DNA of 64,000 nt from Lytechinus pictus (Eukaryota): the NCBI RefSeq assembly GCF_037042905.1, contig NC_087248.1, positions 13,330,001-13,394,000 on the forward strand, written 5' to 3'. The notes beneath the pieces are model-generated. The model searched no databases. It was not told where the DNA came from and saw only the letters and a list, made by a program, of their open reading frames with translations. Positions 8,501-17,443 of this stretch are shown in pieces. The position numbers and the translations under genes were made by a program. Within the stretch, counting starts at the first letter, position 1, and each line of letters opens with the position of its first letter.

Positions 8501-11500
8501 ATGCCAGGAGATGATATTTCCTTCAACGTGGAGTCTGTATCTTCATACCAGGACTACCCAACAGCCAGGCCGCTCCTGGGGGATCAGATCGCCAGGAGGA
8601 AGCACCCAGAGCAGGTGCGAGCTGTCCCAGAAAGCAACAGCAGAGGTGAGAGATGCATGTGTCCACACTTTCCTTAGGCTTAGAGTTGTTTCATACATAT
8701 GCACAATTGTATGTATGACTGGTTTCCTGTAAAGCCAGTCACTGGTGGCCTGATTCACCTCATGCTCACTTGAGCCCATGTCTTTCTAAGTAGGAATGTA
8801 GGATCAAATTATAATACTTAATCAAGCTGGACAAATTATTAAATTCTTGTGCAATGCTCTTATCCTTGAAGAATGAGTTTGAATTTAGCCGATAGGAATG
8901 GAAATTTCTGACGAAGTCTAGCAGCTTGCAGACGAAACGTCGCTTTCCCACTACGTTTGCTACATCGTGAGACAACTGGTTATTTCCTCTACTCAACCCT
9001 TCACCACGATGAACCTCTTCCACATCATCAGAAATGGAAATGTTGGAGAATCTAATAGCACCCAAGAAAGAGTTACCATTTAGGTGTACAGTCTCGCTGT
9101 TCAATTTTTAAGTTTATATTTTGTTTTATTTATTTCTTCATTATCCATCTTTCGCAGCGGTGGTGTCTGCATTGAGGGGCTTGCAGGAAAAGATCCGTAA
9201 GCTGGAGCTAGAGAGAGCCCAGGCAGAGACCAACCTGAAATCCCTATCCAAAGAAACCAGCCAGTACAGACAAACCTTACAGGAGCCTACAGCCACCAAG
9301 AGGAGAACGCAGAAGGAGACACAGACAGCTCGGGATGTACAAGGTATAGATCCACGAACTAGTTACAGATTGATGTCGGGTTCATTTTTGACAATCGGCA
9401 TTGTTGTTGGACCAATTGTTAGACCGTTCGCAGAACTGAATGAGGCCGTATGTTTGGAATGACATCACTGGTTCTTGAGCTATAAATTATGCGATTAGTA
9501 TCACTTTTGTAAACATACATACAATGTTGGCGCTAGGTAAGGCAGCATGATTAAAAAATTTGGCACACATCTACTAGGCAAGTGATTTATCTCGTAGGAA
9601 AATGTACTGTTTTTAGGCAGATTGTGAAGAAACAGGTTTATTTCTTTTCAAAAGCATTTATGAATATGTACATTATTTTGCGATTTTAAATCCCAAAGAG
9701 AAAATGATTATTGATAATTCTTGTTGCATTGTTTGTTGTTTTTAAAAGTTACTATCCATGAAATTGTCTCTTATTGGAAAACACACTAAATGCACTCAAA
9801 GTCCTTGATATAATTTTCACAGAGGTGCAGAGCCAACTATCTGGTGCCGACCAGCGCATACCGCTGCTTGAGAAACAGCTGGAGTACATGCGGAGGATGG
9901 TGCAGAGCGCTGAGAGTGATCGGCAGGCTGCACTGAGGATGGCTGAGGCGCGGAGAACGCATGACACCCTCACCCAACGAGAGGAACTGCAGAGTCAAGA
10001 AGAGAAGCTTCGGAAGCTAGAGAGGGAGTACAACCGCTTAACAGATAACCAATCAGTTTCACAGGTAATTTCACGTTAGAATACCATGGGTATTACTTGG
10101 ATCTGTAGCATTTTTCATAAAGCTGTTGTAAAGTAATGCATGACTATCAGATTGACTGTAATATTGTCAGTGATTTTACGAACCGGCTCAAACCCAATTT
10201 TCTGTCAAGTTTTGGAAATTTATTTTTCTGCATATTCTGAAGGCCCGTGATTCACTCTTTTGATTTGCCAAATTTCACATCAAAATTTGTATTCAATTTT
10301 TTTTCAAAATAGCAAAATAAAAGCAAAAAACAAGATTTTTTTTCAAAGTATGGGCAGTTTACCTTCAGTGCCTACTTGCCCCCAAAGATATTTTTTTTTG
10401 TTTCAGTAAGATTTTTCATTTTAAAAAGTTGGCTGGCATGAGTATGAGCTAAAAGTTTATCATGATATATTAATCTATGACTTTTAGATTTTGAGATATT
10501 CTAATTCATGTGAAGGCCAACAAATAATTTTGCCTGAAATTGAGATGAGGTAGTAAAAATCTTAATCAATATCTGCACATTTCAAATTCAGCTTATGTAC
10601 TGTTATTGAGACGTCCATTTGGTTTGCCATTCCATTACCATATTCTAGCGGTGGTTCAAAATTTTGGCTTACATTTACAAGCAACTTTATGAAATAGCAC
10701 CAGTGTTATTTATTTATTTTTTGTAATTGCACAGTTTAACAAACTGATATTTTGATGTCTTACAAACAGGTTCATTCATCATGAGATGATTGATGTTTTT
10801 TATAGAAGAAATTTTATCTGTAATGACAGTAGTAATAAGGATTTTTGTACTGAAAATATGTTCTTTTGTCTTCCTGTTCTATAGAGTAAAATCAGAGATT
10901 TGGAAAACAGGCTCAAGGAAGAGAGAAGGCAAAGGAAAATGCTCTTAGATCGTGAAGCAGAGGTTTGCCATTATATCTCTCACTTATCGCACTTTGCATT
11001 GTTTATACCTTGTGGTTTAGCATCCTACCTTTATGATGCATCATGTATCGATTCTCTGACAACCACCTTGGAATCTTTCTAATGATCAGATCTACTACAT
11101 TTGTATTGCTCAACTGGTCTGTTTTGAAATGTTATCCCTATTGAGTGGGCCAACATGTATATCTCGTGGAGCAAACTGTGTAGCAAACTGAAGCGTTTTG
11201 TTTATTGAATGCAGGGGTGTGAGAGTTCAGATTTGTATCTGATTTCAGATTTTTTTTCGTTTTGATTTTCAGCTTAATTTCAGCTTATTTTTGGCTTTCC
11301 TTTGTACAAAAAGTATGGGAGCTCTTTCTGTTTCAGACTTTCTACAAGTTTCAGCTTTTTTCAGATCTTTTTATTTGTGACCACTCACACCCCTTTGAAT
11401 GACAAAGTGATTATCAAATACTCAGTGAATTGAATTTGGTTATATATGTGAAGGGTGACACGATATATGCTTCTACAACATTTGCTCTGGTTTTAATATT

Positions 11501-14500
11501 TCAGAGGTTATCGGGTTAAAGTTAGGATATTAATAGAGTTTTTGGATCAGAATAAGGTACAGGTAAAGATCAGGTTTATTTAGTTATGGAGGTTAGGTTT
11601 TATGTTTGGCTTAACGTGCAGATTTTCCATTGGAGCAATTGTCGCCAGAGCGAATGTCATGGTACCTTGTCAAGTGGTGGGGGGGGGGGGTAAGTAATCT
11701 CATAGATAATATATAAAACTTAATCTCTCTCATTTTGTATGATTTTGTAAATATCTTGACCACAGTTATCCATGTTTAGCTATATTTCTGCTAACTTACA
11801 CATGGGAGGAAACCCCCCCAAAACATTAAACTTGTAATTTTACCATTAAATCTTTTTTTTTTACCCCTTACCAAATAGAGAAATGCATATATATGCCTCC
11901 TATCAGCAAAAAATCTCCAATTCTTTTCAATGTCACTTTCAGTTGAGGACTCTGGCAGAAACCAACCGCATCCTACTAGCCACAGAACAGGCCACGGAGG
12001 AGCGAAGACCTAGGAAAGTGAAGAAGAAGAGGAGAAAGGTTCCACAGCCAACTTCTCCCAGGCCTCATTGCACAGGGCAGATCCCATTTGTTGTAGGCAA
12101 GGTAAATATTATCATACAATTAGTAAAATATTAAACATGTGAAAGCTCCGTATTTCAGTTTTAACATAAAAAGCTTTTTAAATTTTTATTTGCGCCATGT
12201 AAATACATATTATACACCTGTTCATATGACCTTCCTCTTAGCATGCATACAAGTACATCTGGTGAAACTTCAGCACTGAAGGAGGCCGATTATTCCAAAG
12301 AAGATGAAGATGAAGTAGAGGAAAAAGTGGATGAACATCAATATGAATAACATCAAAGTCAACAACATCATTCACAAATGCTGTTAATTATTTGTTGTTA
12401 ATTAGAAAGAATGGTGGATATTGAAACAAATAGGAATCGTGATTTTTAAATGTTATTAAAGAGAGAGAAATATGTCAACTGTCTCTTTTGATAAACCATG
12501 TTTCTATTTTTAAGAACCAAATATGAAGACTAATTGAGACATGGCAAAACAAAATCTTTACATCTCACTTTCAGTCAACAACTCCCAGTCACTCTGTGAA
12601 TGCCAATCTCCAGAACGTACTTGCCATTCTGAAGACACACAACACAGCGTGGTGTGGCAACGGACCTCTCGCACCTCACCGACCTCAGAGTGCAAAGGTC
12701 AAAAGGTCAGCATCGGTGTCGTCATCTGCCGGCAGTGACCTATCCGACCTCGTACTTGGACTCCAGGAAGAGTTTGCCCTAATGGGACTGTAAGTTTCAT
12801 TGCACAATGTGACCCATTTTAGCAGAGCTAGAACCTGTTGATTTTAGAATTTTGTATAGAGCTAGAACCTGTTGGATTTTAGAATTTTGTATTTTCTATT
12901 TATTAGAAGTGAAGAATACATCAAAAACTGAAAGAAAAGTATTAAAAGTCTAGTTGAACATTTTTTTAGAGCAAATTCAGATTTCACACATTAATTAACA
13001 TAATCTATAAATTCACTCAATATAAAAAATAATGAATTTCCAATTATGTAGATTACATCATTCCATTAGCAACATGCACATTGATTTTCTGCACAATTGC
13101 ATGGTCACCTGTCGGGAACTGGGGATGAGGGAAGATCCCCTAGCATGGGCTTAGTAGTCTGCAGGCAGAGACCTATGGCTTTCGCATAGTGCATAATGCA
13201 GAGTCTGAAGTAGTGAGGCTACTACATTCACTTACGTGATGTGGTTGCTTCTACTTTTTATTTGAAACACACACATTGGCTCTCAGTCTAGACTCCACCC
13301 TAGACATGGTATTATTTGGAAAGTGTCAAATTCGAGTCTGTGCGTGCAGACTAAGCATCCAGAAAATCAAGATAGGCCACACCATGGCCATTTGGTTTAC
13401 AAGCAAAGATTCATATTTGACACTTTATTCAATTATACCATGTCTAGAGTAAAGACTAGACTCCAAACTCTGTGTCAGGCAGTCACATTACATAATCTAG
13501 TAATAATCACTACTTCAGACTCTGTCTTATGCACTGTATGAATAAAAAAAAAAAAAACTAGAAAGTCAAAAAGGGGCCTAAGCTTTCGATCCTAGCAGAA
13601 TCTTCGTCGGAGGCAAAATGACAAACATATAAAGTGGAACAACCATAATATAGACCACAAACAAGCTTCAGCAACACTAGAAACAAGGAGACAAAAGGGG
13701 CATTAGTGAGTAGAGAAGACCAATCAGGTTAGTGAAGAGGATGAAAGAAAAGGAGTAGGCAGACACAAAGGGAAGTTAGTGTAAGTAAGGCCAAGAGGGA
13801 TTAAGATAATGAGGCAGGCAACATCAAACAGGATCTGGAACAAAACAGTGATAGAGGGATGAATAACTAGAGAATTAGTGAGAGGTGGGTCAAACATGTT
13901 ACAAAGAAAGGCATAATAAACTGGTGCATAAGAGTGGGGGCAAAAAGGAAAAGAACGGGGAACAACTGATAATGTGCAACAGACATATAAGTATATATGA
14001 TAAAGCATTAAACAAACTAAGAGAAGAAGGTAAGTGTAAATATGTATCTATAAGTGATATGTATATAAATATATCCAAAAAAGAAATGTATATGAAAAAA
14101 TATAAATACACATATGGTGTAACTGATATTGTAATCCGCTAGGTGTGACAGGAAAAAAACATAGGACTATACAGTAGGAAAAAAAAAAAACCTGTATATG
14201 TGAAAAAGAGGAAGCAAATTGCCTAAAAAGGTAAAAGCAAATATAGAAGAGAGGGGGTGTATTATGAAGAAACCATAGTATACATGTAAATAAGCAAATG
14301 TGGTAAATCTAAAAGAGGTGAGTGGAGAAAAAAAAATATATATATAATAATTATTATATCGCCTGAATAAGGAAGGAAAAATTGGAGCTGAGCTTGTATG
14401 AGATATGGGAGGAAAGTAGAGGAAGAAACTATAATGTAACTATTCAAAAGAGCTGAGGGGAAAAATGATATGTGTATATAAATTGAAAGTGGATAGGAAA

Positions 14501-14950
14501 GAATAATCAGTCGTTCCCCTCTTGGATGTTCAGGCCATGAGGTTGGGTGGTGCGAAGTCGTCTCATCCAGAGCTTCTCTCTGCTAGTACGGACTGAGTCA
14601 GGACGGGTACTTAAAAAAAACCCATAAGTCTGTGCCAGCAGACTAATGGCCAACCTCGGAATACATTATCACATGATGGTGGTGCTATGTCAGAATGAAG
14701 CTGATACAAGATAGTTCCTTAACTCCACTGACAGTTTACTTTGGATACAAGATTAAACATTCTCGAATTTACCGCCATCATTCTTAATGTATTCAAGTTT
14801 TCTTGTCTTTTGATTATATTTTGGGGACGAGGGAAGATCGCCAATCATGGGCATCCCACCGAAGTATGGTGGGCCACACCAAGGGCAACCTGTCCCCTTA
14901 GAGAAATTCCTCACAGACTAATAAGCTGTGGAACCTAGGGCTACCTAGGC

Positions 14951-14981
<31 letters not shown>

Positions 14982-17443
14982 ATGGTGTCATAATGGTTGA
15001 CTCACAACTATGAATTTTCACTGCATTTTTAAAGTGATGGTTAGTGAACAGAAAAATCACTTAAATTCACTTATTTTTGCAAATCTTATCTGAATATCAA
15101 CAAATTTGTTTTCATCTGCATTCTGAATAATTTCTGAAGATAGTGAGGTTAGTTTTGTTGAGGTTTGCATTTTGCAAGTGTTGATATTATGTAAAAAATC
15201 AATTTCTGCATACTTAATGAGATATGCAAATGAAGTGATGCATATTCATGATGTGTAGATCAAGCAGACAGAGCAGACTTTTCCTTATTTTTGAGGGGCA
15301 TGCTACATGATTTAGATATTTTTCTGAGGATAGTGTTGTGGAGGTTTATGTTTCATAGGTGTCCATATCATAAATTCAGTTTCTGCATATATAATGAGAT
15401 ATGCAAATGAGTTGATGCATATTCATATGTAGTTCAAGCACACAATGCATACAGCACACAGCAAACTCTTCGTGGTTGTTACTATTTTGGACAGGGCTCT
15501 TATTTGATATTTGTCTGAGTGAATGCTGAGACATTCTAGATGGGCTTATTGATTGTTTTTAATTACTTTGAGGAGAAAAACAATAGAAATAAGACAGAAC
15601 AAAAAGTGAATGTCCACTTTGAGGGTATTATGCACCAATTTTTTTTGTTTTTTTGTTCATTGGCAAAGCCCTGATAATCTGCTATGTTATGGACCTTAGT
15701 TTACATTATGTGCCATAAATTGGCATGCTTTATTTAAATTTTAATTAGGCTTATAGTCTGACCAAATGCTGCTCTTAGGGGTACATTGTCAGAGGTTTTC
15801 TGACATAGCAACACAATATATTTCATTTGTTGTTTGAACATTTTTTTTTCATATTGGAAAATGATTGAATGAATTCCATGCTCTTAGATATTAAGAATGT
15901 CTGTAGTAGATCATTTGTTATGAAAATATGTCAGAAAGACTTGTGTGAGGTTTTCCCAACCTAGCATGCAAGGTGTATCTACTGGTATGTACATGTATTG
16001 TGCAAAACTAATTCTTATTTCATTCATCTTTCTCACACATCTCTTTCTTGCATTCCCCAACTTGTTCTCCTCCACACTTATTTTACTTCTCCTCTTACCT
16101 ATTTCTCACACTTTCCATTTCTTTCTATTTCATCATATCTCTTTATTTTTCTCCCCCTCTCCATCTCTGTCATATATTTCTGCCCTCCCCACCTCTTCCT
16201 CTCTCTCCATCTCTTTCTACCTCATCCTACATTCTTATTTCCTCCTTTTTCTTTTTCCTCTCCTTTTTTCTCCAAATTTCTCTCCATCTCTCCCTTTCTT
16301 TCTCCTTTCACAGGGAGCACCAAGATCTTGCCAAGCAGATCCGTGAGTCAGAAGACCCTCTCATCAGGGAGGATCTAGAGAGGGAGCTTGATAACCTGGT
16401 CTTCAAGATGGAGGCCAAGGGAGACCAGATTGCTAAACTCAAGAAACATAAACAACAGGTAGGTTTGATTGCATTCAGAATGCCTCTTGAATGATTAATT
16501 TATCGTTATTCTGGGCTCCATTCCATAAAAAAGTTGCTATGACACCAACTCTTGCTGGAATATCAACTTTCATTGGAAGAGCCAATCAGGCAGCAGAATT
16601 TTCACTGTTGTCATGGTAATTGACATTCCAGCAAGAGTTGCTATCATATCAACTTTTTGTGAATCAGCTTTTGTCAGGATCGTTCAGTACATACATGTTG
16701 TACTTATATTTGAAACATTAATTCATATCAGTTTATCTAAGCATGGATCTGGTTCAGATTTTTTTTAAAAGTGAACTTTCTGATGTACAGGATTGGTTAT
16801 TTGATTAGCTCTCTTGCTATTTTCAAATTAGTATTAAAAACATTATTTTGGAGGTATTTTCCCTAATATTATCAGTTGTACATTGCCTCGGTTCCGATTT
16901 TCATTTATTATCATTGCTGTATTTGTGTGTTTGTAAACAATATAAAAATCATGAATCAACTTGTAGATATGTTGAATAATTACATTTTATCATTAAGGTA
17001 TATATGCTAAAATATTTGCTTAAAAATGTAGCTGTATGTGTGTTTTTTCTTGTTAATGAAGAGTTTGTTCTAACCATAATTTATCATCATTGATGAATTT
17101 GAGATATATGTACCGTGGATTGGGATACCTTGCTAAGAACACTCCCTATCATTAAACTCACTAGAGTTGTTTGCATTAATTTCAGCTTTCTGGAAAGCCA
17201 AAAAAGACAAAAGCCCCCAAAGTACAGAAGACCAAGCCTAGATCAATAGGAACAAGACATTCATCTGACCCTTCCAATTCAAACGGAGCGGAGGTGCAGG
17301 TCATCACCACGGTGAAGACCAAAGGTAGAGGGGCGGGGCCTATCCATGTGTCAAACGGCGATTCCAAACGAAACCTACAAATGCTGCGGGATATGCAAGT
17401 GCTGCAGACATCATTACGCAAAGACGATGTCAGCTGGGATTAA
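5537..17443 (+). CDS. CEP57: Centrosomal protein CEP57/translokin family (CEP57/CEP57L1 homolog), 9 coding exons, 516 aa
   Basis: Exons 5537-5572, 8414-8645, 9158-9343, 9823-10064, 10885-10962, 11943-12101, 12575-12789, 16314-16458, 17186-17443. All introns are GT-AG with consistent phase; total 1551 nt ending TAA. Family motifs: PESNSRAVVSALRGLQEKIRKLELER, LLEKQLEYMRRM, IPFVVGKSTTPSHSVNANLQ, LERELDNLVFKMEAKGDQI, C-terminal NLQMLRDMQVLQTSLRKDDVSWD. The short first exon is the least certain. Confidence 0.92.
6054..6536. mobile_element. MITE-like element with repeated GTATTACCGA subterminal motifs
   Basis: Left end tagtatagtgagtgatggtattaccga; right end gttcggtaatacgatccactaccatacta (inverted); an internal copy of the motif at ~6301. 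Confidence 0.5.
11212..11395. mobile_element. MITE with 6-bp TSD (hAT-like)
   Basis: CAGGGGTGTGAGAGT ... ACTCACACCCCTT; TGAATG duplicated at 11206-11211 and 11396-11401. Confidence 0.65.
13545..14611 (-). mobile_element. 5'-truncated Penelope-like retroelement (GIY-YIG endonuclease C-terminus, 3' region and hammerhead)
   Basis: Minus frame 14611-14507 reads STRPDSVRTSREKLWMRRLRTTQPHGLNIQEGND*, matching the RE-x2-W-x3-L-x-T-x2-P-x-GLN end of PLE GIY-YIG domains. It is followed by a pyrimidine-rich 3' region and a hammerhead motif. Confidence 0.8.
13576..13614 (-). ncRNA. Minimal type I hammerhead ribozyme (PLE-associated, variant core)
   Basis: Minus strand GCCU-CCGACGA-A-GAUUC-UGCUA-GGAUC-GAAA-GC-UU-AGGC: stem I GCCU/AGGC, stem II GAUUC/GGAUC, palindromic AAGCUU in place of helix III. 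Confidence 0.7.

What the first reader, a model, noticed from the sequence alone, without database searches (positions are those of the whole stretch)
13576..13614. Minimal hammerhead ribozyme with a variant CCGACGA core in a Penelope-like element
Seen: the minus strand folds as stem I (GCCU/AGGC), core CCGACGA plus an extra A, stem II (GAUUC/GGAUC, 5-nt loop), GAAA, then GC-UU, with a palindromic AAGCUU instead of a helix III hairpin. It lies about 900 nt downstream of a GIY-YIG C-terminal fragment. Established: Penelope-like elements carry minimal type I hammerheads, often with palindromic helix III proposed to work as dimers. Inference: predicted cleavage after CUU. The U4-to-C change from canonical CUGANGA may be a family-level variant or decay. 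It is antisense to CEP57, so it would not cut that pre-mRNA.
Basis: partly seen in the sequence, partly recalled or inferred. Interest (0 to 1): 0.75.

Follow-up and report, generated by a model that had tools for sequence, protein, structure and literature searches.

The report
Penelope retrotransposon hammerhead, C4 core variant
The 39-base motif is a real copy of the small hammerhead-ribozyme module that Penelope-like jumping genes carry; its one odd core base (C instead of U at position 4) is shared by about 1,500 copies of a young family, so it is an inherited, tolerated variant and not decay, but cutting has not been shown.

Summary
The motif is confirmed on the minus strand at 13576-13614. 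It lies about 20 nt from the 3' end of a 5'-truncated Penelope-like element (PLE) in a CEP57 intron, antisense to the gene.

It has every hallmark published for PLE minimal hammerheads except U4, which is C.

C4 is the family's master state: 1,488 exact copies have C4 and 22 have T4. The T4 copies fit CpG decay.

The genome (a sea urchin according to earlier scan notes; I did not verify this) also holds about 2,400 canonical minimal hammerheads in many families with covarying stems.

C4 has also spread in two other families. Purines at position 4 and changes at G5, A6 and A9 form no families. Single changes of C3 or G8 form none either, but the U3-A8 double change forms large ones. So the fold is under selection and pyrimidine 4 is specifically tolerated.

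Rfam does not detect the motif. Total RNA-seq shows no read ends at the predicted CUU|AGGC cut, so catalysis is unproven.

Earlier notes of this scan (s1-320036, s1-311600, s1-306815) describe a shared changed core base in a family like this one on other DNA; I could not confirm it is the same family.

The kind is known, the core variant is modest, and this lone copy is probably inert.

The parts
13576..13614 (-). Minimal type I hammerhead motif, 39 nt. Helix I is GCCU (13614-13611) paired with AGGC (13579-13576). The core CCGACGA is at 13610-13604, with C4 at 13609. An extra A sits at 13603. The helix II hairpin is at 13602-13588. GAAA is at 13587-13584. The palindrome AGCU (A15.1 G15.2 C16.2 U16.1) is at 13584-13581, and U17 is at 13580.
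   Evidence: The sequence is identical in all 31 family copies read.
13579..13580 (-). Predicted self-cleavage site: 3' of U17 (triplet CUU), between 13580 and 13579.
   Evidence: Inferred from the NUH rule of hammerheads. Reads do not support it: no molecule ends were found at the equivalent places of L051 (table 6).
13559..13575 (-). 3' tail of the module, CCCUUUUUGACUUUCUA. The insertion ends here, followed by a G and a T run in the host.
   Evidence: Copies with unrelated flanks end at ...GACTTTCTA. Other copies continue for a further 60-70 nt of element 'tail'.
13559..14610 (-). 5'-truncated copy of a Penelope-like element, about 1.05 kb: the last roughly 34 codons of the ORF plus a 3' UTR of about 0.9 kb.
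   Evidence: BLAST of the locus against other copies gives 93-95% identity. The 5' boundary was read.
14507..14610 (-). C-terminal remnant of the GIY-YIG endonuclease coding region (..TRPDSVRTSREKLWMRRLRTTQPHGLNIQEGND, then stop).
   Evidence: Longer copies continue upstream into an 865-aa open frame with RVT_1 (E 8.5e-9) and GIY-YIG (E 1.4e-3, below Pfam's cutoff).
16312..16449 (+). Host exon encoding the Cep57 microtubule-binding domain. A weaker match at 12713-12784 (+) covers the preceding part of the domain. The element lies in the intron between them, antisense.
   Evidence: PF06657, E 1.9e-9, 38.3 bits, above the cutoff; profile 29-77 here and profile 4-27 in the upstream piece.

Best explanation
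The motif is one dead, 5'-truncated copy of the terminal hammerhead module of a young, very abundant Penelope-like retrotransposon. In the full element (about 3.6 kb) the module of about 66 nt stands at both ends of the unit. Genomic copies begin 4-6 nt before helix I and end about 20 nt after it. The module is a 'minimal' type I hammerhead with no helix III of its own. Two modules must pair through the palindrome AGCU to build the active double hammerhead, which would cut after CUU. As in other PLEs, activity is probably low and may be protein-assisted. The family's master copies carry C instead of U at core position 4. This is an inherited state that the element's function tolerates, not decay. 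The lone antisense copy in the CEP57 intron most likely does nothing. Shown here: identity, family-level C4, recurrence of C4, and selection on the rest of the core. Inferred: dimer formation, cleavage site, and residual catalysis.
For: The motif fits all four features that emerged outside the search descriptor for PLE min-HHRs in PMC4209133. These are an extra nucleotide between A9 and G10.1, a G10.1-C11.1 pair, a palindromic 15.2-16.2, and consensus families with covariation. Location in the terminal repeats also fits.

The PLE context is established: RVT_1 plus GIY-YIG ORF, the module at both ends of long copies, head-to-head pairs and 66-bp solo copies with target duplication.

Family state: C4 1,488 against T4 22. 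T4 is 3.5% in the 4-T subfamily (10 against 275) and at most about 1% in the rest. C4-G5 is a CpG, so this is the expected decay.

The genome holds 2,389 canonical min-HHRs against 144 control hits. In 23 representatives helix II covaries, 15.2-16.2 is always GC, AT or CG, and the extra nucleotide is A or C.

C4 also propagated in a second family, linked to a loop marker: C4+A 18, T4+T 53, T4+A 0. In a third, diverged family 6 of 7 copies have C4.

No family-level variants were found for purine-4 (225/404), G5A (227/258), A6G (92/123), A9G (79/112), G8A alone (326/1079) or C3U alone (391/234, scattered copies). The compensated U3-A8 core forms large families (1,142/464).

Literature: a natural U4C viroid hammerhead keeps enough activity in vivo (PMC3088659), and an inactivation screen recovered no mutations at U4 (PMC4075628).
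Against: No Rfam hammerhead model matches, in the window or genome-wide with RF00163 (best 25.7 bits against a 34-bit cutoff). Those models expect a helix III.

Ribo-depleted RNA-seq at a summed depth of about 200 over the module shows no pile-up of read starts or ends at the predicted cut. 76-80% of the laid reads run on into unrelated flanks, so most signal is passive transcription of dispersed copies.

Pairwise mutagenesis of a type III hammerhead found low activity for all single changes in the CUGA turn (PMC9901934). Canonical PLE min-HHRs are already weak in vitro (PMC4209133).

The double-hammerhead fold (-16.1 kcal/mol) is not favoured over two monomer folds (-17.2).

The controls fix all other positions, use a reversed pattern of different composition, and did not test G12, A13 or A14.
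Confidence: 0.8

Rival explanations
1. The hammerhead is a catalytically dead relic in this family. The module is kept because it is the end of the element that its reverse transcriptase recognises and where transcription or priming is set. The fold, not the chemistry, is what is selected.
For: In the Anolis PLE, ribozyme-dead mutants did not change in vitro insertion, cleavage needed the element's protein, and no RNA-seq reads ended at the cut (PMC11167929). Here too there are no read ends at the site. About 44% of copies start at the module (826 of 1,488 have 3' UTR upstream), and 66-bp solo copies with target duplications exist. So the module alone suffices as a template end. CUGA-turn mutations give low activity in vitro.
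Against: Across more than 20 families the catalytic positions G5, A6 and A9 and the C3-G8 pair (or its U3-A8 swap) are kept at master level. That is hard to explain by protein binding alone unless the protein reads the complete hammerhead fold. Only pyrimidine exchange at position 4 is tolerated, the same exchange known to keep function in a viroid.
Confidence: 0.3
2. The C is decay of this one copy, or the whole resemblance to a hammerhead is chance in AT-rich intron sequence.
For: The fold of the single copy is no better than shuffles (z = 0.0), and there is no Rfam hit.
Against: The core context occurs in 1,488 exact copies against 0 control hits. All 31 copies read carry the same motif. 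The architecture is shared with about 2,400 canonical motifs in the same genome.
Confidence: 0.02

Closest known systems
Minimal hammerhead ribozymes (min-HHR) of metazoan Penelope-like elements (Cervera and de la Pena 2014, PMC4209133; Lunse et al. 2017, not readable here)
   Same: Type I topology with no helix III. Palindromic 15.2-16.2, here AGCU. An extra unpaired nucleotide between A9 and G10.1. A G10.1-C11.1 pair. A short helix I (4 bp) and a longer helix II (6 bp). Position in the terminal repeats of an RT plus GIY-YIG element. Many solo and inverted copies.
   Different: Core position 4 is C, not U, in the family master. The published descriptor fixed the conserved core, so it would presumably have missed this family. 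The terminal repeat is very short (about 66 nt, or about 130 nt with the tail).
Natural U4C hammerhead variant of a viroid (Ambros and Flores 1998, as cited in PMC3088659 and PMC4075628)
   Same: The same single core change. It is reported to lower activity in vitro while remaining sufficient in vivo.
   Different: That case is a full hammerhead with tertiary loop contacts in a replicating RNA. Here it is a minimal, dimer-dependent motif in a DNA-encoded retrotransposon. I could not read the primary paper.
Poseidon element PAc of Anolis carolinensis (PMC11167929)
   Same: A PLE with a hammerhead in the terminal repeat, internal initiation of reverse transcription leaving a 'tail' in some copies, and no RNA-seq ends at the ribozyme cut.
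   Different: The PAc hammerhead overlaps the ORF start. Here it lies about 600 nt upstream of the ORF and 20 nt from the insertion's 3' end. No biochemical data exist here.

Membership tests
Hammerhead ribozyme (catalytic core consensus) | 5' core box C3 U4 G5 A6 N7 G8 A9 | tested here: not met
   The motif reads C C G A C G A: six of seven positions fit and position 4 is C. A documented natural exception exists (U4C, PMC3088659).
Hammerhead ribozyme (catalytic core consensus) | 3' core box G12 A13 A14, the A15.1-U16.1 pair, and a cleavage triplet N-U-H | tested here: met
   GAA, then A...U in the AGCU palindrome, with triplet C-U-U.
Hammerhead ribozyme (catalytic core consensus) | Helices I and II supported by covariation | tested here: met
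   Within the family the motif is invariant, so no information comes from there. Across 23 representatives of families in the same genome, helix II positions 2-6 show 4-5 pair types each and helix I positions 1-4 show 3-5.
Hammerhead ribozyme (catalytic core consensus) | Match to a curated covariance model (Rfam Hammerhead_1 and relatives) | tested here: not met
   No hit at E<=10. RF00163 genome-wide reaches at best 25.7 bits against a cutoff of 34. The models require a helix III hairpin that min-HHRs lack.
Hammerhead ribozyme (catalytic core consensus) | Site-specific self-cleavage | tested here: inconclusive
   No read starts or ends at the predicted site in three total RNA-seq runs. Standard libraries are poor at showing such ends, and most reads come from monomeric dispersed copies.
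PLE minimal hammerhead (min-HHR) | No helix III, with palindromic 15.2-16.2 allowing a dimer | tested here: met
   GC within AGCU. 23 of 23 representatives in this genome have GC, AT or CG. The double-hammerhead fold evaluates to -16.1 kcal/mol.
PLE minimal hammerhead (min-HHR) | Extra nucleotide between A9 and G10.1, and a G10.1-C11.1 pair | tested here: met
   An A at 13603 and a G-C closing pair.
PLE minimal hammerhead (min-HHR) | Located in the terminal repeats of a PLE | tested here: met
   The module is at the 5' start and 3' end of long copies.
Penelope-like element | A single ORF with reverse transcriptase followed by a GIY-YIG endonuclease | tested here: met
   RVT_1 E 8.5e-9, above the cutoff. 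GIY-YIG E 1.4e-3, 19.3 bits, below the 22.6 cutoff, but with the typical YLITC..YIGET..R..E..GLN motifs. The nearest Atlas clusters are animal RT/GIY-YIG/HTH_animal proteins.

The most novel reading that the evidence does not exclude
Position 4 of PLE minimal hammerheads is functionally a pyrimidine (Y4). On this reading the C4 core is a selected, perhaps attenuated, ribozyme state that has arisen or been kept repeatedly. Slower self-cleavage would leave more full-length template RNA, which could contribute to this family being the most successful PLE in the genome.
Probability: 0.25. Interest if true: 0.55.

Novelty: new variant of a known kind. Interest (0 to 1): 0.35.

Why it matters
Whether PLE hammerheads need to cut at all is an open question. 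They are weak in vitro, and ribozyme-dead mutants still insert in the one reconstituted system. This genome offers a natural comparison: one family of about 1,500 near-identical copies carries C4, beside many canonical families, with U3-A8 families as an internal positive control for selection on the fold. A few short transcripts would test whether C4 lowers, keeps or regulates cleavage. Searches that fix CUGANGA would also miss the largest hammerhead family of this genome. The copy in the window has no likely effect on CEP57.

Tried and rejected
- Rfam scans of 8 kb and of 201 nt at E<=10 gave no hammerhead. RF00163 over the whole genome gave two sub-threshold hits elsewhere. These models do not suit min-HHRs.
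- The single-sequence fold z-score was uninformative.
- I asked whether the 22 T4 copies form an ancestral U4 lineage. This is rejected: they are a 1-3.5% minority in both subfamilies, at a CpG.
- I looked for C-to-U RNA editing restoring U4. No difference is listed at the two C4 places of L051 (801 and 2871) at 10% or more. Eight weaker rows were not shown.
- The first attempt to score the dimer used intramolecular helix I and gave an impossible (crossing) structure. It was redone with helix I in trans.
- Ambros and Flores 1998 (PMC147498) and Lunse et al. 2017 (PMC5785218) are not held. I therefore could not check whether C4 PLE hammerheads are already published.
- No paper in the library combines sea urchin, Penelope-like and hammerhead.
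It was replaced by a script.

Full report
OBSERVATION

- The predicted fold forms helix I (4 bp) and helix II. Helix II can extend to 6 bp, GAUUCU/AGGAUC, with a 3-nt loop.
- On its own the copy has no statistical support. Its folding energy equals that of shuffles (z = 0.0).
- Rfam finds no hammerhead, even at E<=10 on a 201-nt slice.

SURROUNDINGS

The motif lies about 20 nt from the 3' end of a repeat of about 1.05 kb (13559 to about 14610, minus strand).
- The repeat's 5' part encodes the C-terminus of a GIY-YIG endonuclease (..REKLWMRRLRTTQPHGLN.., stop at 14507-14509), 893 nt upstream of the motif.
- Longer copies elsewhere in the genome continue into one open frame of at least 865 aa. 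It has RVT_1 (E 8.5e-9) and a weak GIY-YIG match. Its nearest Atlas clusters are animal RT/GIY-YIG/HTH_animal proteins. So it is a Penelope-like element (PLE).
- Long copies begin 4-6 nt before helix I of an upstream copy of the same module. They then run through a 5' UTR of about 600 nt, the ORF and a 3' UTR of about 985 nt, and end with the module again.
- Insertions end either at ...GACTTTCTA or 60-70 nt further on. This recalls the internal initiation of reverse transcription and the 'tail' described for the Anolis PLE (PMC11167929).
- Head-to-head pairs and 66-bp solo modules with target-site duplications are common. 826 of 1,488 copies have 3' UTR sequence upstream, so about 44% start at the module.
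- The host gene is CEP57. A Cep57_MT_bd exon lies on the plus strand at about 16312-16449, and the preceding part of the domain is at about 12713-12784.

FAMILY STATE

The genome (811 Mb, 368 contigs) is called a sea urchin in earlier scan notes; I did not verify this.
- The 17-mer GCCTCCGANGAAGATTC occurs 1,488 times. The T4 version occurs 22 times. Reversed controls give 0. The 3' half of the motif occurs 1,576 times.
- The best copies are 96-100% identical, so the family is young.
- C4-G5 is a CpG. T4 is 10 against 275 in the subfamily with four T in the tail and at most about 1% in the rest. T4 is therefore the expected deamination decay of inserted copies, and C4 is the state of the master copies.

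COMPARISON WITHIN THE GENOME

The canonical descriptor CTGANGA-N-G-N{8,20}-CGAAA-NN-T-H gives 2,389 hits against 144 for the reversed control. The hits fall into many recurrent families.
- In 23 representatives helix II covaries (4-5 pair types at positions 2-6).
- Helix I is 2-4 bp and covaries.
- 15.2-16.2 is always GC, AT or CG.
- The extra nucleotide after A9 is A (20 cases) or C (3 cases).

These are the features that Cervera and de la Pena (PMC4209133) list as emerging independently of their descriptor in PLE minimal hammerheads. The motif in the window has all of them and differs only at position 4.

IS C4 SPECIAL?

Outside the window's family, C4 gives 105 hits against 63 control hits, but the hits are recurrent.
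- In a second family (helix II GGTAG/CTACC) C4 is linked to a loop marker. The counts are C4+A 18, C4+T 2, T4+T 53, T4+C 1 and T4+A 0. A C4 master must therefore have propagated.
- In a third, diverged family 6 of 7 copies have C4.

The same descriptor with other single changes shows no family-level variants (hits against reversed control):

| Change | Hits | Control |
|---|---|---|
| Purine at position 4 | 225 | 404 |
| G5A | 227 | 258 |
| A6G | 92 | 123 |
| A9G | 79 | 112 |
| G8A alone | 326 | 1,079 |
| C3U alone | 391 | 234 |
| U3 + A8 (compensated) | 1,142 | 464 |

- The C3U-alone hits are scattered decayed copies plus two unrelated repeats without a palindromic 15.2-16.2.
- The compensated U3-A8 core is dominated by large recurrent families. 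Its counterpart in Schistosoma PLEs is published.
- So the hammerhead fold is under selection in the masters of this genome, and U-to-C at position 4 is specifically tolerated.

Caveats:
- The controls differ in composition.
- All other positions were held fixed.
- G12, A13 and A14 were not tested.
- Independence of the three C4 families was not tested by phylogeny.

RNA

Three ribo-depleted total RNA-seq runs of the same species label (raw reads) were laid on a locus carrying a 5' and a 3' module.
- The module is covered about 100-130 fold in each read orientation. The ORF is covered 0-5 fold.
- 76-80% of laid reads run on into unrelated sequence, so the signal is mostly passive transcription of dispersed copies.
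- No place met the criterion for many molecules beginning or ending. Loose ends cluster only at copy boundaries.
- No difference is listed at the C4 positions, so there is no sign of editing to U.

This neither shows nor excludes cleavage. The same negative result was reported for the Anolis element, whose hammerhead does cleave in vitro with protein.

LITERATURE ON U4

- Core changes are generally damaging. All single changes in the CUGA turn of a type III hammerhead gave low activity (PMC9901934).
- A natural U4C viroid variant is reported to keep enough activity in vivo (PMC3088659).
- A phage screen for inactivating mutations recovered none at U4 (PMC4075628).
- PLE min-HHRs are weak even when canonical, and work as dimers or with helix III extended.

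MECHANISM

Shown:
- The motif is the terminal module of a PLE.
- C4 is inherited.
- The fold is selected across families.

Inferred:
- Two modules pair through AGCU, with helix I formed in trans. This double hammerhead evaluates to -16.1 kcal/mol, against -17.2 for two monomers.
- Each RNA is cut after CUU.
- In the element this would trim read-through or multimeric transcripts. The module also marks where reverse transcription starts.

The lone antisense copy in the CEP57 intron has no partner of its family nearby and is most likely inert.

VERDICT

This is a real feature of a known kind. It carries a family-level core variant (C4) that recurs in this genome. Catalysis is untested. Earlier notes of this scan describe a shared changed core base in a family like this one on other DNA; I could not confirm it is the same family.

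Noticed in passing
window 14830-14983 (-): A full-length U12 minor-spliceosomal snRNA match (114.6 bits, cutoff 53). It is the best of four full-length U12 loci in the genome. It lies in the CEP57 intron about 220 nt upstream of the PLE fragment on the same strand, antisense to CEP57.
   Followed up: partly
window 8908-8941 (+): A second minimal hammerhead from another PLE family with a canonical core (CTGACGA, helix II GTCT/AGAC, GAAACGTC). It is on the plus strand, the same strand as CEP57, so it may be transcribed within that pre-mRNA.
   Followed up: no
genome G000, e.g. L056 and L053-L058: A second PLE hammerhead family (GGTAGATG[A/T]CTACC, GAAAATTT) is split into a U4 subfamily (53 copies) and a C4 subfamily marked by a loop A (18 copies). 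No T4+A copies exist.
   Followed up: partly
genome G000, one search list (e.g. C1:4483209-4483241): There are large families of minimal hammerheads with the compensated core pair U3-A8 (1,142 hits against 464 control). The single changes C3U or G8A form no families.
   Followed up: partly
L033 (G000:C2:37278805-37281821), around position 1500: A module-only insertion of about 66 bp, flanked by the direct repeat AAGTTGGTTTT. About 44% of family copies start at the module. This suggests reverse transcription can start at the 5' copy of the module and run off the RNA's 5' end.
   Followed up: partly
L051:600-3369 (RNA-seq): The module is read at similar depth in both read orientations, while the adjacent 3' UTR shows roughly a 3:1 orientation bias. 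The ORF is nearly silent in these samples.
   Followed up: no
window 16540-16647: A hairpin of about 105 nt directly after the CEP57 exon gives sub-threshold hits to plant miRNA models on both strands (MIR828 31.9 bits, cutoff 69). It is probably just an inverted repeat.
   Followed up: no
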